Source: Scyliorhinus canicula (lineage: Eukaryota). From it: DNA of 64,000 bases. A model generated the notes under the pieces. It searched no databases. It saw only the letters and a program-made list of their open reading frames with translations, and was not told the origin of the DNA. Positions 10,044 through 63,774 of this stretch are shown here, piece by piece. Each line of letters begins with the position of its first letter. Within the stretch, counting starts at the first letter, position 1. The translations under genes and the position numbers were made by a program. The stretch spans positions 124,001 through 188,000 of the forward strand of contig NW_024056012.1 in the NCBI RefSeq assembly GCF_902713615.1, read 5' to 3'.

Positions 10044-10276
10044 GAGACTGAAATGTGGAGAGCTTAAGTCGGTTAGGCCTACAGGAATCGGAGTTTAGAA
10101 GAATCAGAGGCGAAGTTACTGAGATATATAGTATTCTCAGGGGACTTGCCAGTGTAGATGCTGGAGATTATTCCCGCTTTTGGGAGAGTCTAGGACCATA
10201 GGGCACAATCTAAGTGCCCTATCCAGCATCTAAGTGCCCTATCCAGCATCTAAGACCATAGGGCACAATCTAAGTG

Positions 10277-13185
10277 CCACATCCAGCAGCAGCCACCGAC
10301 CGAGAAAGCGAGGGAAATGCAGCGGTCTGCAGGTTAGACTGAAGGAACGCAGTTTCAAGACCCCTCTCCCCAGCATACTCCTGGCAAACGTCCAAGCGAT
10401 TGAAAACAAGCTGGATGAACTTAACGCCAGACTTACCTCTCAGAGGGAAGTAAGAGACTGCTGTGTGCTCTGTTTCACAGAGACATGGCTCACCCCCGCC
10501 TCACCGGACTGTGCCATACAACCTGAAGGCTTCTCTATTCACCCGGCGGACCGCACGGCATCTTCAGGCAAAGCGAAGGGTGGAGGGGTTTGCCTCCTCA
10601 TCAACTCCTCCTGGTGCTTGGGTGTGGTGACCCTGGCGACCTACTGCTCCCCAGACCTGGAATACTTGACCGTAAAGTGCCGCCCATACTATCTTCCACG
10701 TGAGTTCACTTCAGCCATTATCACAGCGGTCTACATCCCACCCCAGGCAGAAGTGAGGAAGGCGCTGGATGAACTGTACACAGTCATAAACAACTATGAA
10801 ACAGAACACCCGGAGGCCTTGTTCATTGTGGCCGGAGACTTCAACAAAGCCAAACTCAAGAGTGTACTGCCAAAATTCCACCAGCACATTTCCTGTACCA
10901 CCAGGGGCGACAACACTCTTGACCACTGCTACTCAAAAATCAAGGGCGCCTACCGTTCCATCCCCCGACCGCACTTTAGGAAATCAGACCATAAGACTGT
11001 GCTCCTTCTCCCGGCTTACAAGCAGAAACTCAAGCGGGAGAACCCAGCTAAGATGGTCGTGCAGTGCTGGTCCGAGGAGACAGAAGAGCTCTTACGTGAC
11101 TGCTTGGAGACAATGGACTGGTCCATATTTAAGAACTCAGCGACTAACTTAAATGAGTATGTCACCACCGTCACAGACTTCATCAGCAAATGTGTGGACG
11201 ACTGCGTGCCAAAGAAAGCAGTACGTACGTTCCCCAACCGGAAACCATGGCTCAACTGCGAGATTGACTCCCTACTGAAGGACAGATCTGAGGCGTTCAA
11301 GGCAGACGACCCTGTCCTATACAAGAAATCCAGGTACGACCTCCGCAAAGCCATCCGAGATGCCAAGAGAGAATATCAAACTAAACTAGAGTCACAGACA
11401 GACTCTCGGCGGTTATGGCAAGGACTAAGCAACATAACGGGCTACAAAGCGAAGCCGAGCAGTATCTCTGGCAGCAGTGCACCCCTCCCCGATGAACTTA
11501 ATGCATTCTATGCTCGGTTTGAGCAGGTAACCAACAATCCGCTATCGAGTTCCCCAGCAACCCATAATTCACCCATACCCACCATCACAGTTTCCGAAGT
11601 CAGATCGGCCTTCCTGAAAGTGAACCCACGGAAGGCGATGGGCCCGGACGGGATCCCCGGTCGTGCACTCAGAGCCTGCGCGGACCAGCTGGCAGAGGTT
11701 TTCACAGACATCTTTAACCTATCCCTACTCCACTCCGAGGTCCCCACCTGCTTCAAGAAGACCACCATCATACCGGTACCAAACGTGCCTCAATGACTAC
11801 CGCCCGGTGGCCCTGACATCAGTTGTAATGAAGTGCTTCGAGAGGCTGATCATGAAGCGCATCACCTCCATACTCCCGGAACGCCTTGACCCACTTCAAT
11901 TCGCATACCGTTGCAACCGGTCCACATCAGACGCCATTTCCCTGGCCCTACACTCATCCCTAGAGCATCTCGAAAACAAGGACTCCTGCATCAGACTCCT
12001 ATTTATTGACTACAGCTCCGCCTTCAACACCATCAGCCCAGCCAAGCTCATATCAAAGCTCCAAAACCTAGGACTTGGCTCTCCACTCTGCAACTGGATC
12101 CTTGACTTTCTGACCAACAGACCACAGTCAGTAAGAATGAACACCAACACCTCCTCCACAATAGTCCTCAATACCGGTGCCCCACAAGGCTGTGTACTTA
12201 GCCCCCTACTCTACTCCCTGTACTCACACGACTGCGTGGCAAAACTGGGTTCCAACTCCATCTACAAGTTTGCTGACGATACGACCATAGTGGGCCGGAT
12301 CTCGAATAACGACGAGTCTGAATACAGGAGGGAGATAGAGAACCTAGTGGAGTGGTGCAGCGACAACAATCTCTCCCTTAATGCCAGCAAAACTAAAGAG
12401 CTGGTCATCGACTTCAGGAAGCAAAGTACTGTGCACACCCCTGTCAGCATCAACGGAGCCGAGGTAGAGATGGTGAGCAGTTTCAAATTCCTAGGGGTGC
12501 ACATCACCAAAAATCTATCCTGGTCCACTCATGTCGACGCTATCACCAAGAAAGCACAACAGCGCCTTTACTTCCTCAGGAAACTAAGGAAATTCGGCAT
12601 GTCCACATTAACCCTTACCAACTTTTACAGATGCACTATAGAGAGCATCCTATCGGGCTGCATCACAGCCTGGTATGGCAACTGCTCGGCCCAGGACCGC
12701 AAGGAACTTCAGAGAGTCGTGAATACCGCCCAGTCCATCACACGAACCTGCCTCCCATCCATTGATTCCATCTACACCTCCCGCTGCCGGGGGAAAGCAG
12801 GCAGCATTATCAAGGATCCCTCCCACCCGGCTTATTCACTTTTCCAACTTCTTCCATCGGGCAGGAGATTCAGAAGTCTGAGAACACGGACGAACAGACT
12901 CAAAAACAGCTTCTTCCCCACTGTCACCAGACTCCTAAATGACCCTCTTATGGACTGACCTCATTAACACTACACCCGTGTCTGCTTCATCCGATGCCAA
13001 TGCTTATGTAGTACATAGTATATATTGTGTTGCCCTATTATGTATTCTCATGTATTTTCTTGAATTCTGTTTAATTCCCTTTTCTTCCCATGTACTGAAT
13101 GATCTGTTGAGCTGCTTGCAGAAAAATACTTTTCACTGCACCTCGGTACACGTGACAATAAACAAATCCAATCCAATCCAATCCA
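10277..13185 (+). mobile_element. Rex1/Babar-like LINE: APE endonuclease plus RT, 5'-truncated, one frameshift
   Basis: APE motifs LLANVQ, CFTETWL, VAGDFN, TLDHCY; RT motifs [35 protein letters not shown]; [12 protein letters not shown]; frameshifting deletion at about 11782-11785; AATAAA 13157-13162 then (AATCC)x4 tail. Confidence 0.9.
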
Positions 13186-16100
13186 AGGTGCCACTCATTT
13201 CAGACGAGGGTGAAGAGGAATTTCTTCTCTCAGAGCGTAGTGCTTCTATAGATTCATTTGCCGTAGAGAGTTCGCCTGGTCAATAAATATGTTCAAGGCT
13301 GAGACAGACAGATTTTTCATCAGTAAGGGAATCAAGGGTTTTGGGAATAAAGTGGAAATGTGGAGTAGAGGATTTTACCAGATTTTCCACCATCTCATTG
13401 AATGGCAGATCATATTACATGGGCCGAATGACCAAGTTCTGCTCCAGATCTTATGGTTTTATGGCAGCTGTAGAGACTTTCAATTGAATGACGTAATCAA
13501 TTAGACAAAAATCGTCGCGCCATTTATAATACTTATGAAGCTATCGAAATTTCGCAACGCCCAGCAGGCTCACCAACGTCCTTCAGGAGAAGAAAGCTTC
13601 CCTCCTTACCCTGTCTGGCTCATATGTGACACTAGTTCAGCAATTATGTGGTTGACTAATAACTATCTCTGATATTGCCGAGCAAGCAAGAAAGTCAAAT
13701 GTGAGCAAAATCGCTCGAAGTGCACCTCATCAAAAAAGTGGTTCACATCCGGCTTCTCGGGATGGGCAGTTAATGCTGACTTTGGCACTGATGGCTGTAT
13801 GGCGAGAATGAATGCAAAACTGCAAGTGCTGTAGATTCTGGAAATGCAGAACAAAAACAACAAAGGCTGCTCAGCAGGTCAGTGAGCATCAGCAGAGAGA
13901 GAAACAGATTCACATTTCAGGGGGATTACCTCATTGATATAATTCTGAAGAGCAGAGCTGCTTTTCCCAGTATCTTGGACTAATGTCCGTTCTTCATCTA
14001 AAATCACAGAGTTGTTGGTCACTTATCACATCTCAGTTTGTGGGAGCTTGCTGTGCACAAATGCCCTGCTCTGTTTCCAACATTAGAGCAGTGACTAAAT
14101 TCAGCAAAAATATATCAGTGAGTTTTAAGGGCGTTGGTATGACCTGAGGTCGGATAAAGTGTTTTATAAAAGCAAGCTCTTTCCAAATGTTAACATTTGT
14201 AAATGCAGGTTGTAATATGTCGAAAGATCTGAGATTGATGTGACTACAGATCAATCCTCTGCCTGATGTTGTAATTTATCTACTTTAAATTGGTTAATAT
14301 TTCAATCAAATTAACATTCAGTGGAAAAGTAGCTGGTTAAAGATGCTTTATTAATTGAGGCTTCATAACTTTCAGAATGAATACTTAATTTAAAGTATTT
14401 TTTATTTCAATTAAATACCATCTGTTCTAATGGAAGTTTCTATTCATTTTAACCAACTGTCAATATTCTTAAAATAAACCCTATTTTCAGTTGAAACTAA
14501 TCAATAAGTGACTGTGTTTATCTCGTTTTGCTGAAATGGACATTTCATTGTGACCAGTGAGGTGTTTATGTAAATAAACACAGAAATAGAAGTTCCAGAT
14601 TAGATTGCGGACTGAGAAAAACAAAACAAATGTTTCCCCACCAACACAGCACAGAAATAGAGCCAAAGATGCAAATAGATCAACGGATTCCAATAGTGTT
14701 TGCTGTTCGACATTTTTTAATTAATCAGTTATATGAGAAAAATGGCATGATGATATCCATGTTCATAATTAGGAAATATTCTCTCTCATCTCTAAATATA
14801 AGGGCATGCCAAGTGTGTTAGTAGAATTTTCCTGTATCCTATCTCTCTTTGTGTCTTTCTCATAACTGGTTCTATCTCATGTCTCTCCACGATGGGTCAT
14901 TGTCTTTAATCGACATGTGGCGAACACTAATAACAATTTTACTGTGAAAAGCCCCGAGTCGCCACATTCCGGCGCCTGTTCAGGTGAGTTGGAACGGGAA
15001 TTGAACCCGCGCTGCTGGGCTTGTTCTGCATCACAAACCAGCTGTCTAGCCCACTGAGCTAAACCAGCCCTCTCACCCGAACTCACCCCGTTGGCTTCCA
15101 ACTAAATGTATCGAATCCAATGTATTGGAATCCGTCGAGGGAGTTTTACGCTAAAATGAGATTGGAGCATTCAATGATCTTGGAGTGTTTAATGAGAACT
15201 GTAGAGATAAGTTTCCTCTATATCTGCTCTGGGCTGCACATGGTGGTTGAGGATTTGATGTGGCAGGGCCGAAGAATCTTTCCTTGCACTTAATCAAGCT
15301 GCCGAGACCTTGGAGCATTTGGCTGAAGAGTGTAGAGCAAGTTTACTTGCATGTAACCTGCACTGAACCTGCCCTGTGAGTGTTTGATATGACTGTGCAT
15401 AGGGAGATTTACTCCGTATCTGAACTGTGCTGTACCTGAACTGGGTGAGTTTGATGGGGAAATACAGAGGTTTCTTTACCCAGTAACTAACCCCACTGTC
15501 AACCTGTCTTGGGGATCTCTGAAGGAAGAGTGCAGAAGAGGTTTTGCCTGGTATAGAACTCTTGGTTTCTCGGCCTTTAATGTGTTTGAGCGAGTTATGT
15601 AGAGGGAATTTAATTCTATATCTAAACAGTCTGCAGCTGCTCTGAGAATGTTTGATGGGGACAGTGTAAGGGAGTTTCTCTTTGTCACCAACCTGTGATG
15701 CACCTGGCCTGCGAGTGTTTGAAGGGACCGGCGTCCCGGGCTCTGTATTGCACCAGGCCATGACCCCGTCTCTGTTTATATTCTACTACCTTGTACCAGT
15801 TTCAGTTTATATTAAATAAGGACATATTTCTCTTTGTTCATATTAAACTAGGCCACCAATTAAAGGTCATGTCTTGATCAATGAGGCGTTCAGGAGTTAT
15901 TGGGAGAAGGCAGGAGAATGGGGATTAGGAACATATTGGCCATAATTTAATGGTGGAGCAGTCTCGATGGGTCGAATGGCCTAATTCTGCTCCTAAATCT
16001 AATGGAGTTATGGACCCAGTCTGTCTCTCTTTACATTAACCCAGAACCTGACTCTGTTTCTATTAATATAAATCTGTCTCTGTATTACAATAGATACAGC

Positions 16101-31900: not shown

Positions 31901-32227
31901 GGACACACTATATCAGACACACAGATCTCCGTCTCCCACACAGTCTCACATCCATAATCGCTCTTCAAACAGAATCAATCCTTCTTTCACACACACAATC
32001 TCAAACATACTATCTCTCTCCCTTTCTCTCACACACACTTCCACAGACACACACACGCACCCTGTCACACACACATTCTCTCACCTGCTCTCTCATGCAC
32101 ACTGTGTCACGTGTCTCTCACACAAAATCTCTCTTTCGCACATGCACACTCTCATACACAAACACAAACATACTCACACAAACACTTATTTCTCTCACAC
32201 ACACAAACACTGGTACATACATATCTC

Positions 32228-32449
32228 AGTAAGAAGTCTTACAACACCAGGTTAAAGTCCAACAGGTTTGTTTCAAACACGAGCTTTCGGAGCACGGCTC
32301 CTTCTTCAGGTGAATGAGCCTTCTTCATTCACCTGAAGAAGGAGCCGTGCTCCGAAAGCTCGTGTTTGAAACAAACCTGTTGGACTTTAACCTGGTGTTG
32401 TAAGACTTCTTACTGTGCTCACCCCAGTCCAACGCCGGCATCTCCACAT
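32228..32449. mobile_element. Penelope-like element end forming a perfect inverted repeat, with 12-bp TSD
   Basis: Arms 32227-32317 and 32325-32415 are exact reverse complements with a 7-nt loop; CATACATATCTC at 32216-32227 and 32450-32461. Confidence 0.8.
32330..32364 (+). ncRNA. Minimal type I hammerhead ribozyme motif (mirror copy on - strand at 32278-32312)
   Basis: CAC-CTGAAGA-A-GGAGC/CGT/GCTCC-GAAA-GCTC-GTG: catalytic core boxes, 5-bp stem II, palindromic AGCT stem III, CAC/GTG stem I. Confidence 0.65.
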
Positions 32450-33337
32450 CATACATATCTCGTAAACACACTTTCTTTCACTCAAACACAGACATGTTCT
32501 TTGGCATACTCTCTCACACGTTCTCTCAGAAACACACAAACTCGGCCGCACAATCTGTCCTTCTCAGACACACGGTCTCTCCCTCATACAGATACAAACG
32601 CTCCCACACAAACAGTATCTCGCAAACACACATTCTCTCACTCAAACAGAGACATATTCTTTGGCATACTCACACCTTCTCAGAAACACACAAACGCGCC
32701 CCCACATTCTGTCTCTCTGTGACACACGTGGTCTCTCTCTCTCACTGTCTGAGGTACACACCCACATGCTCTCTAATCTCTGTCACACACTCAATCATAC
32801 ACACACTATCTCGAACTCACGCACACAATCTTCCGTTTACACACACTCTCACACACATTGCCTCTCTCACTCACACACAAAATCTCACACACACACATCC
32901 CCTCACACACTCTCACACAGAAACTCTCCCTTGCAAATTATTTTATTCTCCCTCTAACACCTATCTCACATACATACACGTACTCTATCTGTAGGAGTGT
33001 GGTCTGTTCAGTTTCTGAAAGTATTAAAGCAGCTGCCCAGTGATCTACACTGCTGTCTGACTTTACACAGCCGGTGTTACTGAAAGCTGATTAATGTGGA
33101 GAATCAGGACAGGATCGATGGAGCGGAAGAGGAGGAGGCGGGGGTGGTGGAGCCGAATGGAGGAGCCCCCAGCACGGCTGTGGACAAGACAAAAGGAAAC
33201 TGAGTCTGAGCGGAAAATCATCCAGAGAAACATCGTCCTAATGGCTGGGAGCACCTGTGAATCATCACTCAGCCACGGTCACTCACTCACTCACTCACTC
33301 ACTCCCACACCCTCACTCACACATCCTCACTCACTCC

Positions 33338-38822: not shown

Positions 38823-39325
38823 CGGCTGGTTCGTGATGAAGAGCGATCCCAGCAGCGCGGGTTCAATTGCTGGACCGGCTGAGGTTATTCATAAAGACCC
38901 CCATTTCCAACCTTGCCCCTGGCCTGGGATGTGGTGGCCCTCGGGTTAAATCACCACCAGTCAGCTCTCAAAAGGAGAAATCAGACTCCAGGACTACGGC
39001 GGGGTTTCACATTTTGGAGAACATGATGGCTGAAATAATGGGAAAAATCATCCGCACTTCGCTTTCAATCCAATGAAATTTACATCATTCTGATGACATC
39101 AAAATGTTGTTTTATGCCAGGTGATATGGACGGAGAAAAATATGTACGTTTCTAATGAGGGGCCAAACAGGTGGTGATTCTCAAATGATAAAACTAATAG
39201 AAGCTGAAATGTGGATGGAAAAATGTTGGAATAAACGCATAATTCTCGTGAATTTTAGAAATGTTTGGTTGCTTAATAAATACAATCCCAGAGTCTAACT
39301 TGTTGAATGGGCCATTCTCTCCCAG

Positions 39326-39625
39326 CGACACCGTCTCCGCCCACTCTCTACAGCCTGGTCTCCTCCTGTCAGCAACACAACACCGACGGCTCCGTCACCT
39401 TTGGCTGTCTGGCGATGGACTACTCCCCAGAAATCAGCAGTCTTACCTGGAAGAAAGATGGGCAGCTGATCACCACTGGTGTTAAGAAATACCCGTCAGT
39501 GAGAAACAAGAAGGGAACCTACACCCTGAGCAGCCAGTTAACCATCACCGAGTCAGAGGGGGCATGCAGCAAAATCAGCTGTGAGGTTCGACACAGCGTC
39601 TCAGACAAGAGCATTGGAATGACAT
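39326..39625 (+). CDS. IGHM: IgM Cmu1 exon ([15 protein letters not shown]...[10 protein letters not shown]...TWKK...ISCEVRH)
   Basis: Acceptor CTCTCCCAG; 300 nt, phase 1-1; C1-set Cys/Trp pattern; donor GTAAG at 39626. Confidence 0.96.
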
Positions 39626-39824
39626 GTAAGTGTTGTGGAATCTGTGAGAAACAGACGCTTTGATTACTTTATTTAAATCTTTGGTCATAACACATTGATG
39701 GTTCTCTGCACAGTTCTGATTCCTGCGAGAAATAGTGACAACAGAGAAACTGTTAAAATATAATTAAACATTTTATTCGTCACAACATCTTCTTCAAGAA
39801 ATGTCTAACTTGTGTTTCTTGAAG

Positions 39825-40136
39825 GTCCTCTACCTGACATCCATCCAAATGTTCTCCTCACCGTGAGTTCCAGTGAAGAAATCTCAAGCAAGAAATTTGC
39901 CACCATGGTCTGTTCAATTAACGATTTCCATCCAAACTCAATTAACGTGAAGTGGCTGAAGAATGGACAACCCATGGATTCAGGAATTATCACCTCTCCC
40001 GCCTGTGAAGTGAACGGGAACTTCTCGGTGAGCAGTCGGCTGACAGTCTCCGCTGGGGAATGGTTCAGCAAAGCGGTCTATACCTGCCAGGTCACTCATC
40101 AAGAGGTCACCCAAAGTCACAACATCACCGCGTCTG
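39825..40136 (+). CDS. IGHM: IgM Cmu2 exon ([37 protein letters not shown]...YTCQVTH)
   Basis: 312 nt, phase 1-1; AG/GT boundaries; C1-set motifs. Confidence 0.96.
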
Positions 40137-40774
40137 GTAAGAGACACAAACAGGGGAAACAATAAATCATCCTGCACTCTGATGTTAATCCAAATCAGGA
40201 ATTTACTAAAGTTAGTACAAAGCACAGAACAACTTCTAATTTACTGCCATGTAGTTTGTGTTTCATTCTGATGTAAGAGATGCATTAGGATTGCTCACCA
40301 TTCAGGATTTGATCAGTATAGAAATAAATGTTTCCCTCTAACTTGAAGTAATTTAGGGAATGAGGTGGATTTGATATCAGCTTTATCCTGAGACAGCTGA
40401 TTAAATTGCAGAGGCAATGGCTGTCTGGAACCCTTTACTGAAACCAGCTCGGAACGAAGATTTTGGAATGTTTATCCAACCTATTTATAATTCAGCCTTC
40501 AGCATTAGGTTTCTGAGATCAGGACTGGAATATTTGTATTGGCAATGCTGCAATACAGATTCATTAGAATGGTATCGGGGCTGACTGTATTTCAAAATGA
40601 GAATAGTTTTCACAAACCAAACTGGTTTTCCGTTGTGTATAGAAGATTAAAGGCGATCATTAGAGGTTATTATTTCGAAGTTGATTTATTCCCATTGAGT
40701 GAGTGAAGGCTAAATCCTGCTGTCCTGATTCTGAAGATGAAACTTGGGTTGATTTCCATTTTTTTCATTCACAG

Positions 40775-41083
40775 ATCCTTCCGTTTGCACTGATGCCTCA
40801 GTAACAATACTGCCACCACCAATAGAACAGGTCTTACTGGAGGCGACTGTAACCTTAACCTGCGTCATTTCAAATGCTCCCTATGGAGTTAACGTATCCT
40901 GGAGCGAAGCAAAGAAGCCGCTGAAATCAGAGATTGCCAACCAGCCTGGGGCAGATACTGAGAGCGTGGTCAGTAAATTAAACATCTCGACACAAGCCTG
41001 GCTGAGTGGGGCTGTGTTTGACTGTGTGGCGAGCCATCAGGACCTGCCAACTCCTTTAAGAATTTCAATTCACAAAAAAATAG
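40775..41083 (+). CDS. IGHM: IgM Cmu3 exon ([33 protein letters not shown]...[13 protein letters not shown])
   Basis: Manually translated (absent from the ORF track); 309 nt, open, phase 1-1; acceptor TTCACAG; donor GTGAGT at 41084. Confidence 0.95.
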
Positions 41084-41655
41084 GTGAGTGGAGAGATTGA
41101 AGCAATAAGTGAGTCATTGTGTCTATTTCTAGTGTCAGTGCAGCGGTCAGTATTTAGCATTCAGGGTATTTATGGTCCATTCTGATTGGTAAATCCACTA
41201 ACTGAATCCTCTGGGCATTTAGAGTTTAAGGGGGAAATTGATATGCGGATGAATGAACAATGAATTAAAAGCAGTGATATTGTGTTTAGATGGAGTGAGA
41301 CCATAGACCACAAGACTTGGGAGCAGATGGAGGCCATTGGGCCCATCAACACTGATCCAGCCTTCAGTGAGATCCTGACTGATCTGCTGTGATAATCTTC
41401 AACTCCTCTTTCCCGCCTTATCCCCATATCTCTTGACGCATTTACTAATTTAAAATATGTCTTTCTCAACCTTGAACATACCGACCGACACAGAATCTAC
41501 AGGCCCCCTGCGTTAAATAATTCTGCAGCTTCGCTACCCTCTGAGAGAGGAAATTCCTTCTCATCTGCGTTAAATGGGTGAACCCTTACTTTGTGATCCT
41601 GCACGCTGCTCCTAGACGCTCTCACAGGGGAAAACAATCTCTCACCGTCTATCCT

Positions 41656-41883
41656 TTTTTTTTTTTAAATTTAGAGTACCCAATTATTTTTTCCAATTAA
41701 GGGGCAATTTAGCATGGCCAATCTACCTATCCTGCACATCTTTGGGTTGTGGGGGTGAAACCCACGCAGACACGGGGAGAATGTGCAAACTCCACACGGA
41801 CAGTGATCCAGGGTCAGGATTTGAACCCGGGTCCTCAGCGCCGTAGGCAGCAATGCTAACCACTGTGCCACCGTGCTGCCCCC
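41656..41883 (-). mobile_element. HE1-like SINE with 15-bp TSD in the Cmu3-Cmu4 intron
   Basis: CTCACCGTCTATCCT at 41641-41655 and 41884-41898. Confidence 0.9.
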
Positions 41884-43132
41884 CTCACCGTCTATCCTAA
41901 GAAGCTCCCGGAGAATCTTTCATGTCTCAATTAGGTCGCTTTATTCCTCTAAACTCCAAGAAGTCCAACCCAGCAAAGTTACCCTCAGCTCATAAGAAAA
42001 TCCCTCCATACTCCGGATCAACCTCGTGATCCTTCTCTGGACTGCCTTCAAAACCAATCTGACTTCCTTAGATGAGGGCACAAAAACTATTCAAAGTGTA
42101 TCAGGTGTAGTCTAACAAAATAATAATAATCGCTATTGTCACAAGTAGGCTTCCATGAAGTTACTGTGAAAAGCCCCTAGTTGCCAAATTCCGGCGCCTG
42201 TTCGGGGAGGCCGGTACGGGAATGCCTTGTATAGTTTTATCCAGACTGCTCCATGTTTATATTCTATTCCCTTTGGAGTAAATGTCAACATTCAATTTGT
42301 CTCCATATATCCTGCAGAACTTTCTTTTTGTGGTTTCTGCACGAGGACCCCCAATTCCCCCGTTACTTCAGCTTTCTCCAGTCTTTCTCCATCTAAATAA
42401 TATTCCGTTATGTTCTTCCTCCTACCAAAGTGTCTAACCTCACATTTCTGTCCCTCTGTGGATATTCTGTAATCTTCACCACTTGCCTTTCTACCTATTT
42501 TTGTTATCTGCAAATCTGGGAATAGTACATTCATTTATTAAACACAGTTTTGAAATTCCTGTATATTACATCTACTGGCCCCCCTCTCTCTAGCCTTCTC
42601 CTTATCACCTCAAATAAGGGTACTAAATTTGTCAAGAAATGATTTCCCCTTCACGAAGCCGTACTGACTCTGCTGATTATATTGTGTATTTCTAAATGCT
42701 CAGCTATTGGATCCGTTATAATGGGCTCGAACCGTTTCCCACTGACAGATGTTAAGGTCACTGGCCTATAGTTACCTGTTTTTGACTCCGTCCCTTTTGA
42801 ATAAGGGTGTCACATTGGCAGTTTTCCAAATCCTCTTGGGAGAAGGTGGGAGGAGCCTGGTGTGGAGCTTTGACACGAGCACAGAACAGTTGGGCCGAAT
42901 GGCCTTTCCCCTGCTGTACACTTTCTGAAACTTTCGAACCAACATCCGTAAATTCTCAGGGAAAAGGATTGTGTCCACCTCTGCTCCGAGCTGGGAACCC
43001 GGACAGATCCCAGAGTGGAAAATGGAAACCTTTAAAATCCAACACAAAACACATTTCTCCCACATCTAACCCGCGGTTCCATTATCACCGGAATTCCCCA
43101 TTTTATTGACATTTATTGTACATTTTCTGCAG

Positions 43133-43524
43133 ATCCCAATCCGCGGGAACCGTCCGTCTCTGTCCTCCTGCCCTCGGCTGAAGACGTCTCCGCCCAGAGA
43201 TTCGTCTCCCTCAGCTGCTTAGTGAGAGGTTTCTCCCCCCGAGAGATCTTCGTCAAGTGGACCGTCAATGACAAGCCGGTGAATCCCGGGAACTACAAGA
43301 ACACCGAGGTGATGGCGGAGAACGGCAATAGCTCCTTCTTCATGTACAGCCTGTTATCCATTGCAGCGGAGGAGTGGGCCAGCGGCGCTTCTTACTCCTG
43401 TGTGGTGGGACATGAAGCCATCCCCTTGAAGATCATCAACAGAACGGTTGATAAATCCAGCGGTAAACCCAGTTTTGTGAACATTTCCCTCGCTCTGATG
43501 GACACCGTTAATTCATGTCAATGA
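43133..43524 (+). CDS. IGHM: IgM Cmu4 plus secretory tailpiece ([20 protein letters not shown]); internal donor for the membrane form after 43462
   Basis: Acceptor TTTTCTGCAG; [19 protein letters not shown] and YSCVVGHEA; tail has the N-glycan sequon NIS and a penultimate Cys; G|GTAAAC at 43462/43463. Confidence 0.97.
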
Positions 43525-43993: not shown

Positions 43994-45400
43994 GTTAATC
44001 CACTGTACCCCCACTTCACCAACAGAGAGGGGGAGGGGCATTAGTTAATCCACTGTACCCGCACTTCCCCAACAGAGAGAGGGGGAGGGGCATTAGTTAA
44101 TCCACTGTACCCGCACTTCCCCAACAGAGAGAGGGGGAGGGGCTTTAGTTAATCCACTGTACCCCCACTTCCCCAACAGATAGAGGGGGAGGGGCTTTAG
44201 TTAATCCACTGTGAAGAGACATGAGAGGTGTAGAATAAGTGGGAGGCTCCGGCCGCCGTTGAAATACCACTACTCTTATCGGTTTTTCACTTACCCGGGG
44301 AGGCGAGCCCTGAGGGGCTCTCGCTTCTGGTCGGAAGCGCCCGGGCGGTAAAGGGATTAAGGGTTATGGTGTTCGGGCCGGAAAGTGGAGCTGAGTCCAC
44401 AAAAGATCAGCCATGATCTAATTGAATGGCGGAGCAGGCTCGAGGGGCCAGATGGCCTACTCCTGCTCCTAGTTCTTATGTTCTTATGTTCTTATGTACC
44501 CCCACTTCCCCAACAGAGAGAGGGGGAGGGGCTTTAGTTAATCCACTGTACCCCCACTTCCCCAACAGAGAGACGGGGAGGAGCTTTAGTTTATCCACTG
44601 TATGCGCACTTCCCCAACAGAGAGAGGGGGAGGGGCTTTAGTTTATCCGCTGTAGACCCACTTCCCCAATAGAGAGAGGGGGAGGGGCTTTAGTTAATTC
44701 ACTGTACCCCCATTTCCCCAACACAGAGACGGGGAGGGGCATTAGTTAGTCCACTGTACCCCCACTTCCCCAACAGAGAGAGGGGGACGGGCATTAGTTA
44801 ATCCACTGTAACCCACTTCCCCAACAAAGAGAGGCTGAGGGGCTTTAGTTAATTCACTGTACCCCCACTTCCCCAACAGAGAGAGGGAGAGGGGCATTAG
44901 TTAATCCACTGTAGCCCACTTCCCCAACAAAAAGAGGCAGAGGGGCATTACTTAATGCACTGTACTCCCATTTCCCAGGCAAAGAGAGGGGTAGGGGCAT
45001 TAGTTAACACAGTGTACCCCCACTACCCAGGCAAAGAGAGGGGTAGGGGCATTAGTTAACACAGTGTACCCCCACTACCCAGGCAAAGAGAGGGGTAGGG
45101 GCATTAGTTAACACAGTGTACCCCCACTACCCAGGCAAAGAGAGGGGTAGGGGAATTAATGAACACACTCAATTTCCCCAGCAAAGAGAGGAAGAGGGGC
45201 ATTAGTTAACACACTATACCCTCACTTCCCCAACAAAGAGACGGTGGGGGCCTGAGTTAATCCACTGTACACCCGCTTCCAACAGTGAGAGAGAGAGGGA
45301 TTAGTTAATCCACTGTACCCACACTTCCCCAACAAAGAGAGGTAAGGGGCAATACTAACCCATTTTACCTCCACTTTCCCGACCAAAAGAGAAGGAAGGT
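43994..45400. repeat. About 52-bp minisatellite (TTAGTTAATCCACTGTACCCCCACTTCCCCAACAGAGAGAGGGGGAGGGGCA-like)
   Basis: Period 52 (44041 to 44093; 45001 to 45053); interrupted at 44213-44497. Confidence 0.92.
44213..44497 (+). mobile_element. Chimeric retrocopy: 28S rRNA fragment (about 44213-44346) fused to a CR1 3' tail (about 44347-44497)
   Basis: GAAGAGACATGAGAGGTGTAGAATAAGTGGGAGG, TGAAATACCACTACTC and GGGGCTCTCGCTTCTGG are vertebrate 28S rRNA motifs; then GATCAGCCATGATCTAATTGAATGGCGGAGCAGGCTCG and a (TTCTTATG)x3 tail. Confidence 0.88.
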
Positions 45401-47569: not shown

Positions 47570-47697
47570 ATACCACAGACCACACCTGGACTGAAGACAA
47601 TGAGGATGATAACGGCAACATCTGGACAACCGCTTCCACATTCATCACCCTGTTCTTCCTGAGCATTTCCTACAGCGCTGCAGTCACTCTGGTGAAG
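47570..47697 (+). CDS. IGHM: IgM TM1 exon (DTTDHTWTEDNEDDNGNIWTTASTFITLFFLSISYSAAVTLVK)
   Basis: Acceptor TCTCCGTAG; phase 1 matches the Cmu4 internal donor; CART-type WTTASTF..LF.LS..YS motif; donor GTGAG at 47698. Confidence 0.96.
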
Positions 47698-47835
47698 GTG
47701 AGAAGATTCAATCCACTCACACATCAAACTGACAGAAGCCGTTTAAGAACACTAAATGTTTGATTGATTAAAATCTCTAACATCAATGTTCCAGATCATA
47801 AACATCTGCTTCATCAGTTTCTCTCTCTTTTACAG

Positions 47836-55000: not shown

Positions 55001-55139
55001 CCCTATTTTCTGTTTTAAATCAGTTTCACAAGGTGTTCGAAGGGGAGGCTTTAAAGTCCAGAAACTCAAACCAAGCATCACATCAGGATCTGACAGAACC
55101 CTCAATTTATCATATCCTGAATATCAGCGGATTTTGAAC

Positions 55140-56261
55140 ATGGAAGGAAAAATCATCGTTCACAGTGGGGAGAAACCGTACACGTGTTGTGTGTGTGGAC
55201 GAGGATTTAGTCAATCATCAGGCCTCACAAGCCACAAATTCAGTCACACAGAGGAGAAACCATGGAAATGTGGGGACTGTGCGAAAGGATTCACTTACCC
55301 ATCCAACCTGGAAACTCATCGACGCAGTCACACTGGGGAGAGACCATTCACCTGTTCCAAGTGTGGGAAGGGATTCACTCAGTCATCCACCCTGCTGAGT
55401 CACCAGCGAGTTCACACTGATGAGAGACCGTTTCAATGTCCAGATTGCGGGAAGTGCTATAAACGTTCTGGGGAACTGATGTGCCATCAACGTGTTCACA
55501 CTGACGAGAAACCGTTTAGGTGCTCTGACTGCGGGACTGGGTTCAGACGATCAGCTGATCTCGCTGTACATCAGCGAAGTCACACTGGGGAGAGATCGTT
55601 CACCTGCTCCGAGTGTGGGAAGGGATTCACTCACTCAACCAACCTGCTGAGTCACCAGCGAATTCACACTGGGGAGAGACCATTCACCTGCTCCAAGTGT
55701 GGGAAGGGTTTCACTGAGTCATCCACACTGCGGAAACACCAGCGAGTTCACACTGGGGAGAGACCATTCACCTGCCCCAAGTGTGGGAAGGGATTCACTG
55801 AGTCATCCACACTGTGGAAACACCAGCGTGTTCACACTGGGGAGAGACCATTCACCTGCTTAGAGTGTGGGAAGGGATTCACTCAGTCATCCCACCTGCT
55901 GAGACACCAGATAATTCACACTGGGGAGAGGCCATTCACCTGCTCCGAGTGTGGAAAGGGATTCACTCAGTCATTCAACCTGGTGAGTCACCAGCGAGTT
56001 CATACTGGGGAGAGACCGTTCACCTGCTCCAAGTGTGGGAAGAGATTCAGTCACTCATACAACCTGCTGAGTCACCAGCGAGTTCACACTGGGGAGAGGC
56101 CATTCACCTGCTCCAATTGTGGGAAGGGTTTCGCCACTTCATCCCACCTGCTGAGACACCAGCGAGTTCATACTGGGGAGAGACCATTCACCTGCTCCGA
56201 GTGTGGGAAGAGATTTACTCAGTCATCCCACCTGCTGAGACACCAACGAAGCCACAAGTAA
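55140..56261 (+). CDS. C2H2 zinc-finger protein, 13 tandem fingers with TGE(R/K)P linkers; no KRAB/SCAN visible
   Basis: Open ORF; AACATGG Kozak context at 55140; frame stays open back to a likely acceptor at 55021-23; AATAAA at 56383-88. Confidence 0.92.
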
Positions 56262-59820: not shown

Positions 59821-60709
59821 AAAAGTCTGCAGCTTTCTTTCTCACTGCCAAAAAGAGGACCGTAAATAACTTAATCCTGTCCCCATGTTAAAGTCTAAAG
59901 CATTGATATAGAACTCAAGAAGCATGGAATCATGTCCTGGGAAATCTAGAATCCCACTGGAAATACTCCACCAATCACAAACATACCTCTCGACCAATGC
60001 CCTTTGCTTCCTGCTGCTCCAGCTGATGTCACTTCCTGCACTTGTGATTGTTCTGGACATGAGAAGTATCCTGGTTTTCCCACGTGGAGCAGGACTGGAA
60101 TCCCCAGCCAGGTCTTTAATTATTTGATTATTTGACTTAAGCAAAATAAATTTAAGATTAAAATAAATAAAGATTCATCAGCTTCTCACCAATCAGTTTC
60201 TTCCATTGAGCTGAAGTCACCTTTTATCCGGAATTAACTGAAAATGTTTTGATAATTGTTTTTTAAAAATAAATTTAAAGTATCCATTTCTTTTTTTTTT
60301 AATTAAGGGACAATTTAGCATGACCAATTCACCGACCCTGCTCATCTTTGGGTTGTAGGGGTAAGACACACGCAAACACAGGGAGAATGTGCAAACTCCA
60401 CTCGGACAGTGATCCAGGGCCGGGAACGAAACCAGGTCCTCAGCGCCTTCAGGCAGCAGTGCTAACCAGTGTGCCACCATGCCACCTGTTTTTGTTAACT
60501 GTTAATATCTAAACCTCTCAAATGATTAATTGACTAAAAATTCAGACGTCTTTACTCTTACAATGCCAACTTCATCTTTATTCCCTGGATTTGATTAACG
60601 GACCGCAAACTGTAATTCTATGAACGATGATCAGATTATTTCAGTTTTGTGATAATTAATGAATCGTCTCACTTTATAATTGATGAATGCAGTGACCAGG
60701 ATGTGCTCT

Positions 60710-63222
60710 CCACAGGGCTGGGATAGCCTGTCATTGCCACAGGACTGGGATGCCCTGTCATTGCCACAGGACTGGGATGCCCTGTCATTGCCAAGGGACT
60801 GGGATGGCCTGTCATTGCCACAGGACTGGGATGGCCTGTCATTGCCACAGGACTGGGATGCCCTGTCATTGCCACAGGACTGGGATGGCCTGTCATTGCC
60901 ACAGGACTGGGATGGCCTGTCATTGCCACAGGACTGGGATGCCCTGTCATTGCCACAGGACTGGGATGCCCTGTCATTGCCACAGGACTGGGATGGCCTG
61001 TCATTGCCACAGGACTGGGATGCCCAGTCATTGCCACAGGACTGGGATGGCCTGTCATTGCCACAGGACTGGGATGCCCTGTCATTGCCACAGGACTGGG
61101 ATGCCCTGTCATTGCCAAGGGACTGGGATGGCCTGTCATTGCCAAGGGACTGGGATGGCATGTCATTGCCACAGGACTGGGATGCCCTGTCATTGCCAAG
61201 GGACTGGGATGGCCTGTCATTGCCACAGGACTGGGAGGCCCTGTCACTGCCACAGGACTGGGATGCCCTGTCATTGCCACAGGACTGGGATGGCCTGTCA
61301 TTGCCACAGGACTGGGATGCCCTGTCATTGCCAAGGGACTGGGATGCCCTGTCATTGCCACGGGACTGGGATGGCCTGTCATTGCCACAGGACTGGGATG
61401 GCCTGTCATTGCCACAGGACTGGGATGCCCTGTCATTGCCAAGGGACTGGGATGGTCTGTCATTGCCACAGGACTGGGATGGCCTGTCATTGCCACAGGA
61501 CTGGGAGGCCCTGTCACTGCCACAGGACTGGGATGCCCTGTCATTGCCACAGGACTGGGATGGCCTGTCATTGCCACAGGACTGGGATGCCCTGTCATTG
61601 CCAAGGGACTGGGATGCCCTGTCATTGCCAAGGGACTGGGATGGCCTGTCATTGCCACAGGACTGGGATGGCCTGTCATTGCCACAGGACTGGGATGCCC
61701 TGTCATTGCCAAGGGACTGGGATGGTCTGTCATTGCCACAGGACTGGGATGGCCTGTCACTGCCACAGGACTGGGATGCCCTGTCATTGCCACAGGACTG
61801 GGATGCCCTGTCATTGGCACAGGACTGGGATGCCCTGTCATTGCCACAGGACTGGGATGGCCTGTCATTGCCACAGGACTGGGATGCCCTGTCATTGCCA
61901 CAGGACTGGGATGCCCTGTCATTGCCACAGGACTGGGATGGCCTGTCATTGGCACAGGACTGGGATGCCCTGTCATTGCCACAGGACTGGGATGCCCTGT
62001 CATTGCCACAGGACTGGGATGCCCTGTCATTGCCACAGGACTGGGATGGCCTGTCATTGCCAAGGGACTGGGATGGCCTGTCATTGCCAAGGGACTGGGA
62101 TGGCCTGTCATTGCCAAGGGACTGGGATAGCCTGTCATTGCCAAGGGACTGGGATGGCCTGTCATTGCCAAGGGACTGGGATGCCCTGTCATTGCCAAGG
62201 GACTGGGATGCCCTGTCATTGCCGCAGGACTGGGATGGCCTGTCATTGCCGCAGGACTGGGATGGCCTGTCATTGCCACAGGACTGGGATGGTCTGTCAT
62301 TGCCACAGGACTGGGATGCCCTGTCATTGCCAAGGGACTGGGATGGCCTGTCATTGCCAAGGGACTGGGATGGCCTGTCATTGCCACAGGACTGGGATGC
62401 CCTGTCATTGCCACAGGACTGGGATGTCCTGTCATTGCCACAGGACTGGGATGGCCCGTCATTGCCACAGGGCTGGGATGGCCCGTCATTGCCACAGGGC
62501 TGGGATGGTCTGTCATTGCCACAGGACTGGGATGCCCTGTCATTGCCACAGGACTGGGATGGCCTGTCATTGCCACAGGACTGGGATGCCCTGTCATTGC
62601 CACAGGACTGGGATGGTCTGTCATTGCCACAGGACTGGGATGCCCTGTCATTGCCACAGGACTGGGATGCCCTGTCATTGCCAAGGGACTGGGATGGCCT
62701 GTCATTGCCACAGGACTGGGATGCCCTGTCATTGCCATAGGACTGGGATGCCCTGTCATTGCCACAGGACTGGGATGGCCTGTCATTGCCACAGGACTGG
62801 GATGGCCTGTCATTGCCGCAGTACTGGGATGGCCTGTCATTGCCAAGGGACTGGGATGCCCTGTCATTGCCAAGAGACTGGGATGGCCTGTCATTGCCAC
62901 AGGACTGGGATGGCCTGTCATTGCCACAGGACTGGAATGCCCTGTCATTGCCACAGGGCTGGGATGCCCTGTCATTGCCACAGGACTGGGATGGCCTGTC
63001 ATTGCCACAGGACTGGGATGGTCTGTCATTGCCACAGGACTGGGATGGTCTGTCATTGCCACAGGACTGGGATGGCCTGTCATTGCCACAGGACTGGGAT
63101 GCCCTGTCATTGCCACAGGACTGGGATGCCCTGTCATTGCCACAGGACTGGGATGCCCAGTCATTGCCACAGGACTGGGATGCCCTGTCATTGCCACAGG
63201 ACTGAGATGCCCTGTCATTGCC
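60710..63222. repeat. 27-bp minisatellite, about 93 copies (CCACAGGACTGGGATGCCCTGTCATTG)
   Basis: Constant 27-nt period; variants GCC/GGC and CACAG/CAAGG. Confidence 0.97.
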
Positions 63223-63774
63223 TTTATTTATTCCATTATTCACTGACTGAAGCAACAATAAACTGGAGGTTAAAATAAATAAAGATTCATCAACCACTCA
63301 CCAATCAGGTCGATCCATTTGCCTGAAGTCACGTTATTTTTATCAGGAATTAACTGAAATGATTTTCTTCAATCTTATTACCTAAACAGATTGGATTTTA
63401 ACTTACTGAAGAATTCAGACTTTTTCACTGCTCCAATCACTTGTCATTCAGTTGCAACTTTATCCTCTTGATTTGATCAACAGAACACTAACTGCAATTA
63501 TATAAATAATCAAATTGATTCAGGTTTATACTAATTAATGAATCATGACTTATAGTTCATTAATGCAGTGACCAGAATGCTTCTTGCATAATCTCCTTGC
63601 TCTTATATTCCAGGCCTCATCCAAGAAAGGATTCTTGGCTGCCTGATCAATCTATCCAGCTACCTGTGGATAGGGACTCCAATGCCTCTCTGTTGCTCTA
63701 TGTTCTCAGTATCATTCTATTCATAGTTCATTCCCTTGTCTTGTTTTCACTCTGAAATTCATTATCTCTCAATG

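What the first reader, a model, noticed from the sequence alone, without database searches (positions are those of the whole stretch)
44210..44497. 28S rRNA-CR1 chimeric retroposon (candidate shark SINE28-like family) inserted in the IgM intron
A 285-bp insert splits one minisatellite unit exactly (CCACTGT|ACCCCCAC). The 5' 134 bp or so is sense-strand 28S rRNA (3' half of the molecule) and the rest is a CR1 3' tail ending in (TTCTTATG)3. TGT occurs on both sides, and the host CACTGT resembles the 28S CACGGT that I recall preceding this fragment, suggesting microhomology joining. It is either a one-off RT template switch from CR1 RNA to rRNA, or a member of a 28S-headed SINE family mobilised by CR1. 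28S-derived SINEs are described in mammals; I know of none with a CR1 tail in sharks.
Basis: partly seen in the sequence, partly recalled or inferred. Interest (0 to 1): 0.75.

Follow-up and report, generated by a model that had tools for sequence, protein, structure and literature searches.

The report
Shark 28S rRNA–CR1 chimeric retrocopy
A 285-base piece of retro-copied RNA, made of a slice of the large ribosomal RNA welded to the tail of a CR1 jumping gene, landed recently in an intron of a shark antibody (IgM) gene; it is a real example of a known kind of reverse-transcriptase accident, and whether it also belongs to a repeat family could not be tested here.

Summary
Window 44213-44497 is a 285-bp insert that cuts one unit of a 52-bp minisatellite, and the two halves rejoin exactly. 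The array lies in the Cmu4-TM1 intron of a shark IgM cluster.

- **28S part:** bases 44211/13-44347 are sense-strand eukaryotic LSU rRNA (Rfam RF02543, 75 bits, E 1e-16, model 2441-2586 of 3401). It is the only rRNA hit in the 64 kb.
- **CR1 part:** bases 44348-44497 are a CR1-type LINE 3' end, with an 8-bp-stem hairpin and a perfect (TTCTTATG)3. Nine older, 63-75% identical tails in the window continue upstream past the junction, so the join lies at an arbitrary internal CR1 position.
- **Age:** CpG observed/expected is 0.95 in the rRNA part and 0.13 in the flanks, so the insert looks young.

My best reading (0.6) is a one-off chimera from a single CR1 retroposition: reverse transcription began on a CR1 RNA tail, moved to 28S rRNA, and joined the target through short homology.

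A SINE family (0.25) is not excluded, because no tool here holds this genome. An unchecked scan note (s1-253743) reports another 28S+CR1 element elsewhere in this genome. Against a pol III SINE: an internal T5 run and no A/B boxes. It is not mammalian SINE28.

The parts
43994..44212 (.). Left part of the 52-bp minisatellite (target), ending ...AATCCACTGT
   Evidence: TRF: period 52, 4.2 copies, 95% matches; sequence
44210..44212 (+). Left TGT: host sequence that also matches the 28S consensus (UGU/GU) just before the fragment; 5' junction microhomology of 0-3 nt
   Evidence: cmscan alignments start at 44211 or run through 44210-12
44213..44347 (+). Sense fragment of 28S (LSU) rRNA, model positions about 2441-2586 of 3401. 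From memory of 23S homology this is the L1-stalk helices plus the start of the next expansion segment.
   Evidence: RF02543 at 74.9/74.8 bits, E 1e-16 to 3e-18; aligns to a natural eukaryotic 28S, L001; CpG o/e 0.95
44283..44287 (+). TTTTT run inside the rRNA part. It would act as a pol III terminator upstream of the CR1 tail.
   Evidence: sequence
44347..44348 (+). 28S/CR1 junction (...GCGCCCGGGCG|GTAAAGGGATT...), certain to within 1-2 nt
44348..44497 (+). 150-nt 3' end of a CR1-type LINE
   Evidence: blastn to nine other tails in the window, 63-83% identity; no LSU hit on its own
44431..44469 (+). Terminal hairpin GGAGCAGG...CCTGCTCC with inner GGCC-AGAT-GGCC, the putative CR1 reverse-transcriptase binding site
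   Evidence: RNA fold; hairpin plus 8-bp microsatellite is described as the CR1 hallmark in PMC5729268
44473..44496 (+). Perfect 8-bp microsatellite (TTCTTATG)3 at the element's 3' end
   Evidence: TRF 100% matches; pattern search
44495..44497 (+). Right TGT: either a duplicated target or the end of the microsatellite plus the first base of the next unit
   Evidence: sequence
44498..45391 (.). Right part of the same 52-bp minisatellite, resuming ACCCCCACTTCC
   Evidence: TRF: period 52, 17.5 copies
43130..43524 (+). Context: IgM Cmu4 exon with secretory tail (...[20 protein letters not shown])
   Evidence: ORF; Pfam C1-set E 3e-16
47570..47700 (+). Context: IgM TM1 exon (...NIWTTASTFITLFFLSISYSAAVTLVKV); approximate limits
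   Evidence: motif scan of six-frame translation

Best explanation
This is a dead-on-arrival chimeric retrocopy made in one CR1 retroposition event.

Proposed steps (inferred):
1. A CR1 endonuclease/reverse transcriptase nicked the minisatellite unit at CCACTGT/ACCCCC.
2. It primed cDNA synthesis on the 3' microsatellite of a CR1 RNA and copied the last 150 nt of that RNA through the hairpin.
3. It then continued on 28S rRNA, entering at ...GCGCCCGGGCG in an expansion segment. This happened either by template switching or because the two RNAs had been ligated beforehand.
4. It copied about 135 nt of rRNA towards its 5' end.
5. The cDNA end was joined to the upstream target DNA, where the host sequence (GGCTTTAGTTAATCCACTGT) partly resembles the rRNA sequence just upstream of the fragment.

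What is shown: the two-part composition, the orientation, the exact target restoration, the intact CR1 hairpin and microsatellite, and the signs of youth. The order of events, and template switch rather than RNA ligation, are inferred.

The insert lies in the Cmu4-TM1 intron, in the sense orientation of an IgM gene. There is no sign that it has a function.
For: - LSU rRNA match at 75 bits, confined to 44211-44347.
- CR1-type tail 44348-44497 with hairpin and perfect (TTCTTATG)3.
- In the other CR1 copies the homology runs on upstream of the junction (...GAGACAGACAGATTTTTCATTA|GTAAGGG). The join is therefore at an arbitrary internal CR1 position, as expected of a switch.
- The head-to-tail order (cellular RNA 5', LINE 3', both sense) is the order TPRT followed by a switch produces. 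It is also the order of the 28S/LINE-1 chimeras catalogued in human (n=18, 83% sense; PMC13174262).
- CR1 requires its own hairpin and microsatellite to start (Suh 2015, as cited in PMC5729268). A foreign RNA can therefore only ride in behind a CR1 tail.
- The flanks restore one repeat unit with at most 3 bp duplicated.
- Host/28S similarity upstream of the 5' junction has p about 0.01.
- There is only one copy of the rRNA part and of the junction in 64 kb.
- A T5 run at 44283-87 and the absence of good A/B boxes argue against an autonomous pol III unit.
- CpG o/e is 0.95 in the rRNA part against 0.13 in the flanks, so the insertion is recent.
Against: - Genome-wide copy number could not be measured.
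- An unchecked first-reader note (s1-253743) reports another '28S rRNA fragment fused to a CR1 3' tail' of similar flagged length (298 against 288 letters) on another piece of the same genome. This could be a second family member, an independent chimera, or a paralogous IgM cluster.
- The shark's own 28S was not available. The exact junction microhomologies and the age are therefore not measured.
- The tail is assigned to the CR1 clade on its hairpin and 8-bp microsatellite only; no linked CR1 ORF2 was found in the window.
Confidence: 0.6

Rival explanations
1. It is one copy of a multi-copy, CR1-mobilised retroposon family with a 28S-derived head: a SINE in the broad sense. The family would have been founded by such a chimera and then amplified from a master copy, transcribed either by read-through from host genes or from an unrecognised promoter.
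For: - It has the head + LINE-tail architecture of a SINE with an intact CR1 recognition module.
- It looks young: CpG o/e 0.95, perfect microsatellite.
- An unchecked scan note reports a second 28S+CR1-tail element of similar length elsewhere in the same genome (s1-253743).
- Earlier notes on this genome report amplified snRNA-derived retroposons (unchecked).
- There is precedent for chimeras seeding SINE families (PittSINE, PMC5729268; SINEU, PMC4494074).
Against: - Only a single copy is present in 64 kb.
- The best A-box and B-box matches carry 2-3 mismatches, and the best A-box match lies in the CR1 part.
- A T5 run 71-75 nt into the element would stop pol III before the CR1 tail.
- Searches came back blank: translated junction frames in the protein collection, exact-pattern metagenome scans and ORF look-ups. 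These blanks carry very little weight.
- Two such elements in about 86 Mb scanned is also roughly what independent chimeras would give, at a rate extrapolated from human 28S/L1 chimeras (my rough estimate).
Confidence: 0.25
2. It is a 5'-truncated copy of a CR1 LINE lineage that carries a captured 28S fragment inside its 3' UTR. The truncation point happens to fall within or at the start of the captured piece.
For: Some LINEs do carry captured sequences in their 3' UTR. Most CR1 insertions are 5'-truncated.
Against: None of the nine other CR1 tails in the window has rRNA sequence at that position; they continue with CR1 sequence. The 5' end shows homology-assisted joining exactly where the 28S similarity to the host begins, which fits any truncation equally well.
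Confidence: 0.07
3. It is an assembly chimera, or a DNA-level capture of rDNA and CR1 fragments at a repaired break, and not a retroposition.
For: Minisatellites are hard to assemble, and no reads were available to check.
Against: The insert ends precisely at a LINE 3' microsatellite. It interrupts one repeat unit with exact restoration and at most 3 bp of duplication, and its parts are in the order and orientation that TPRT predicts. A collapse or mis-join would not produce this.
Confidence: 0.03

Closest known systems
[quoted passage not shown]
   Same: A sense fragment of a cellular non-coding RNA is fused 5' to a LINE 3' end and inserted in one event. The fragment size (about 135 nt) lies within the reported 50-482 nt. 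By my reckoning from memory, not tested, the segment lies inside the human hot region 3,636-4,115.
   Different: The LINE is a CR1-type element with hairpin and 8-bp microsatellite, not L1 with poly(A). The host is a shark. There is no 7-17 bp TSD, only 0-3 bp.
SINE28 of mammals (Longo et al. 2015, PMC4994717)
   Same: LSU rRNA-derived sequence retroposed by LINE machinery.
   Different: SINE28 is the terminal ~500 nt of LSU with an A-rich tail, 5-28 bp TSDs, L1 nick sites and reported pol III dependence. This element is an internal LSU segment with a CR1 tail, a T5 run and no demonstrated copies.
CR1-mobilised SINEs born by template switching (TguSINE1/PittSINE in passerines, PMC5729268) and 5S-headed DeuSINEs with CR1 tails (SINE3/AmnSINE1; table in PMC3747384)
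   Same: A CR1-derived tail with hairpin and 8-bp microsatellite, and a head acquired from a cellular RNA by a presumed switch during TPRT.
   Different: Those heads (tRNA, 5S) carry pol III promoters and the families have many copies. Here the head is a pol I product without a recognisable promoter, and no family has been shown.
Known shark SINEs with CR1-type partners (HE1/HER1, SacSINE1, SINE2-1_CM; table in PMC3747384)
   Same: They depend on a CR1-type LINE tail in cartilaginous fish.
   Different: All of them have tRNA-derived heads. No 28S-headed element is listed in PMC3747384 or in the 2024 rDNA/TE review PMC10946416.

Membership tests
LINE-mediated chimeric retrocopy (template-switch / ligation chimera) | The 3' part is the 3' end of a LINE, with the features its reverse transcriptase needs | tested here: met
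   150-nt CR1-type tail, hairpin 44431-44469, (TTCTTATG)3
LINE-mediated chimeric retrocopy (template-switch / ligation chimera) | The 5' part is an unrelated cellular RNA fused directly to it, usually in sense | tested here: met
   LSU rRNA at 75 bits on the same strand, abutting the CR1 homology at 44347/48
LINE-mediated chimeric retrocopy (template-switch / ligation chimera) | Both parts were inserted in a single event (one intact target restored, shared boundaries) | tested here: met
   The flanks rebuild one 52-bp unit, with 0-3 bp duplicated
LINE-mediated chimeric retrocopy (template-switch / ligation chimera) | The junction is unique to this locus and not shared by a family | not testable with these tools
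   Single copy in the 64-kb window. The genome is not searchable here. An unchecked note of another 28S+CR1 element exists.
SINE (LINE-dependent, internally promoted repeat family) | Many dispersed copies with the same head-tail junction and 5' end | not testable with these tools
   One copy in the window. Indirect searches were blank and uninformative.
SINE (LINE-dependent, internally promoted repeat family) | Internal pol III promoter (A and B boxes) in the head | tested here: not met
   The best A-box match (2 mismatches) lies in the CR1 part. The best matches in the head have 3 mismatches, and the B-box candidates have 3 mismatches.
SINE (LINE-dependent, internally promoted repeat family) | No pol III terminator before the LINE-derived tail | tested here: not met
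   TTTTT at 44283-44287, upstream of the tail
SINE (LINE-dependent, internally promoted repeat family) | The tail is derived from a partner LINE present in the same genome | tested here: met
   Nine related tails in the window
SINE28 (mammals) | Head derived from the terminal ~500 nt of LSU rRNA | tested here: not met
   The fragment covers model positions 2441-2586 of 3401. Definition from PMC4994717.
SINE28 (mammals) | A-rich or simple-repeat tail with L1-type TSDs of 5-28 bp | tested here: not met
   CR1 tail with an 8-bp microsatellite, and at most 3 bp duplicated
CR1-clade LINE 3' end | Terminal hairpin followed by an 8-bp microsatellite | tested here: met
   hallmark as described in PMC5729268
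CR1-clade LINE 3' end | Continuity with a CR1-clade ORF2 in full-length copies | not tested
   No full-length copy with this tail is present in the window. The EN/RT ORFs at 10234-12958 end in a different (CCAAT)n tail.

The most novel reading that the evidence does not exclude
The insert is a young member of a so far undescribed catshark retroposon family with a head from an internal 28S rRNA segment and a CR1 tail. Because of the T5 run, the family would amplify without a conventional pol III promoter, for example by co-transcription within host genes. This would be the first 28S-headed, CR1-mobilised SINE-like family, and the first rRNA-headed one in cartilaginous fish.
Probability: 0.25. 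Interest if true: 0.6.

Novelty: new member of a known kind. Interest (0 to 1): 0.35.

Why it matters
CR1 reverse transcriptases are thought to accept only RNAs that carry their own hairpin and microsatellite. This requirement is the usual explanation for why CR1-dominated genomes have few retrogenes.

A clean, young 28S-CR1 chimera shows the one route by which foreign RNA still enters such genomes, which is riding behind a CR1 tail. It is also the raw material from which new SINEs arise. It extends a phenomenon catalogued for L1 in mammals to CR1 in a shark.

If further copies share the junction, it would be a new type of SINE head. As a single locus it is a neutral marker in one IgM cluster, useful at most for dating cluster duplications.

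Tried and rejected
- **Second copy in the window.** Pattern searches and blastn for the rRNA part and the junction found none. A whole-window Rfam scan at E<=5 found no other rRNA fragment.
- **Copies elsewhere, by indirect routes.** All came back blank, and none of these collections is known to hold the shark genome, so the blanks say almost nothing:
  - the 60-aa frame open across the junction, searched by words against the protein collection;
  - the sense 28S frame;
  - exact-pattern scans of metagenome contigs for the junction and for the expansion-segment part;
  - exact look-ups of two ORFs spanning the right boundary.
- **A shark 28S reference for dating.** The antisense 28S frame gave one hit (P0001). 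Its contig L001 is a 28S of an unidentified, non-shark eukaryote from an ENA metagenome. It is AT-richer and not human-like. It was useful only to confirm the conserved context, not for dating.
- **Big profile search.** I did not use the search of protein representatives.
- **The Rfam extension of the LSU match to 44384** is rejected as forced.
- **SINEU as a CR1 precedent** is rejected. The paper assigns SINEU to Tx1 partners.
- **CR1 ORF2 link.** Pfam on the two LINE-like ORF fragments next to the CR1 tail at 41298-41445 found nothing.
- **Spliced IgM model.** The exons were scanned one by one and the joined step was left out.
- **Scan index by sequence** gave nothing.

Full report
**What is there**

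The region 43994-45391 is one 52-bp minisatellite. TRF reports it as two arrays, 43994-44212 and 44495-45391. Between them lies a 285-bp insert. The left flank ends ...GTTAATCCACTGT and the right flank resumes ACCCCCACTTCCCC, so removing 44213-44497 restores a normal unit.

The array sits in a shark IgM constant-region cluster on the + strand:
- Cmu1 at 39307-39663, Cmu2 at 39812-40165, Cmu3 at about 40780-41080.
- Cmu4 with its secretory tail, ending at 43524.
- A TM1 exon (...NIWTTASTFITLFFLSISYSAAVTLVKV) at about 47570-47700.

Pfam finds C1-set domains at E 2e-14 to 3e-21 in the three exons scanned, Cmu1, Cmu2 and Cmu4. The insert is therefore in the Cmu4-TM1 intron, about 690 bp past the secretory stop, in the sense orientation. 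I scanned the exons one by one and did not build a joined protein.

**The 5' part**

Rfam's eukaryotic LSU model matches 44211-44384 at 74.9 bits, E 1.4e-16, model positions 2441-2602 of 3401. Cutting the scan at 44347 leaves the score unchanged at 74.8 bits, with the match running to model position 2586. The piece 44348-44520 alone gives no LSU hit. The rRNA part therefore ends at about 44347.

It is the only rRNA match in the 64 kb, at the gathering threshold and at E<=5. A natural eukaryotic 28S recovered through a spurious antisense ORF (P0001/L001; non-shark, not human-like) aligns through the conserved part (GTGAAGAGACATGAGAGGTGTAGAATAAGTGGGAG...TTGAAATACCACTAC...). It then diverges in the variable part, as expected of an expansion segment. 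From memory of the 23S homology, this is the L1-stalk region plus the start of the next expansion segment. I did not test that placement.

**The 3' part**

Blastn of 44347-44497 against the window finds nine other copies of the same tail, at 69-83% identity in local blastn matches and 63-75% over the whole aligned tail. In the alignment the shared sequence starts at GTAAAGGG (44348). In four other copies it continues upstream as ...GAGACAGACAGATTTTTCATTA, which the insert lacks. The junction 44347|44348 is therefore an arbitrary internal point of the CR1 3' region, not the natural edge of a repeat.

The tail folds into a hairpin with a perfect 8-bp stem (GGAGCAGG/CCTGCTCC, 44431-44469). This is followed by a perfect (TTCTTATG)3. 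[quoted passage not shown] No full-length CR1 with this tail is in the window, so the clade assignment rests on those hallmarks.

**Junction details**

- TGT occurs at 44210-12 and at 44495-97. The left copy can also be read as rRNA: the Rfam alignment starts at 44211 or runs through it. The right copy can be read as the end of the third microsatellite unit plus the first base of a fourth. The target-site duplication is therefore 0-3 bp.
- When the scan is cut at 44347, cmscan extends the alignment 18 nt into the host repeat: GGCTTTAGTTAATCCACTG against consensus GACUCUAGucuGgcaUUG.
- Scoring that consensus, copied from the tool output, against 20,000 random 19-mers of the window gives an empirical p of about 0.01 for a match this good.
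- At the 28S/CR1 junction at most 1-2 nt can be shared. The species' own 28S is needed to say more.

**Age**

The rRNA part keeps 11 CpGs (observed/expected 0.95), while the flanking minisatellite has 0.13 and old CR1 tails 0.18-0.68. The hairpin stem and the microsatellite are perfect, and the target unit is undisturbed. The insertion therefore looks recent. I could not turn this into a date without the species' 28S.

**Mechanism**

The order (cellular RNA at the 5' end, LINE tail at the 3' end, both sense) is what target-primed reverse transcription gives if synthesis starts on the CR1 tail and then continues on another RNA. CR1 enzymes are held to need their own hairpin and microsatellite (Suh 2015, as cited in PMC5729268), so a foreign RNA can enter only in this way.

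The same architecture is now catalogued for L1 in human: eighteen 28S/LINE-1 chimeras, 83% sense, segments of 50-482 nt. The authors attribute these to template switching or RNA ligation (PMC13174262). I cannot separate those two routes here.

**One-off or family**

Against a conventional SINE:
- The head is a pol I product.
- The best A-box and B-box matches carry 2-3 mismatches, and the best A-box match lies in the CR1 part.
- A T5 run at 44283-87 would stop pol III 71-75 nt into the element, before the tail.
- The window holds one copy.

For a family:
- A first-reader note elsewhere in this genome (s1-253743; unchecked, sequence not visible) describes a '28S rRNA fragment fused to a CR1 3' tail' with a flagged length of 298 letters, against 288 here.
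- That could be a second member, an independent chimera from a favoured rRNA segment, or the same insertion in a duplicated IgM cluster.

About 86 Mb of this genome has been scanned. Two such notes are roughly what independent events would give at a rate extrapolated from the human catalogue (my rough estimate). I put the one-off at 0.6, a family at 0.25, a CR1 lineage with captured rRNA cargo at 0.07 and an artefact at 0.03. Earlier follow-up notes call the genome a catshark; I did not verify this.

**Comparison with known elements**

It is not SINE28, which is the terminal ~500 nt of LSU with an A-rich tail and L1-type TSDs (PMC4994717). A table of SINE/LINE partners (PMC3747384) lists only tRNA-headed SINEs with CR1-type partners in cartilaginous fish. 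A 2024 review of rDNA in transposable elements (PMC10946416) lists SINE28 as the only 28S-derived SINE. SINEU, which I first recalled as a CR1 case, is assigned to Tx1 partners.

**Verdict**

The finding is real and correctly described: a clean, young CR1/28S chimeric retrocopy. It is a new example, in a new LINE clade and a new host, of a known kind of event. Interest is moderate. It would rise if a genome search shows a family.

Noticed in passing
window 43994-45391: A 52-bp minisatellite of about 22 units (consensus GTTAATCCACTGTACCCCCACTTCCCCAACAGAGAGAGGGGGAGGGGCATTA) lies in the Cmu4-TM1 intron. The four units left of the insert match each other at 95%; the right-hand units match at 82%.
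   Followed up: partly
window 10234-13190 and 13186-13463: A LINE with endonuclease and RT ORFs (Exo_endo_phos; RVT_1 at E 1e-35, plus an ALKBH8_N-like stretch) ends in a (CCAAT)n-type tail. It is followed immediately by a separate 5'-truncated CR1-type tail fragment.
   Followed up: partly
window 41298-43065 (- strand): The Cmu3-Cmu4 intron holds a decayed CR1-type tail (41298-41445). Upstream of it are LINE-like ORF fragments (for example ...KTANVTPLFKRDG) that Pfam does not recognise.
   Followed up: partly
window 32747-32789 (- strand): Sub-threshold Rfam hit to Ocean-VII RNA (24.8 bits, E 0.005). It lies about 300 bp from the palindrome/hammerhead that another note flags at 32216-32461.
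   Followed up: no
window 60631-63297: Four long overlapping ORFs (686-888 aa) on both strands of the same 2.6 kb. They look like a long low-complexity or tandem-repeat tract rather than genes.
   Followed up: no
window 55134-56261 (+): An uninterrupted ORF of 375 aa made of tandem C2H2 zinc fingers (...[16 protein letters not shown]...) lies downstream of the IgM cluster.
   Followed up: no
L001 (ENA ERZ27248230, contig k141_243356): This metagenome contig is a eukaryotic 28S rRNA gene (Rfam 1984 bits) on which four 'genes' were called. It is an example of spurious ORFs on rRNA in the protein collection.
   Followed up: partly
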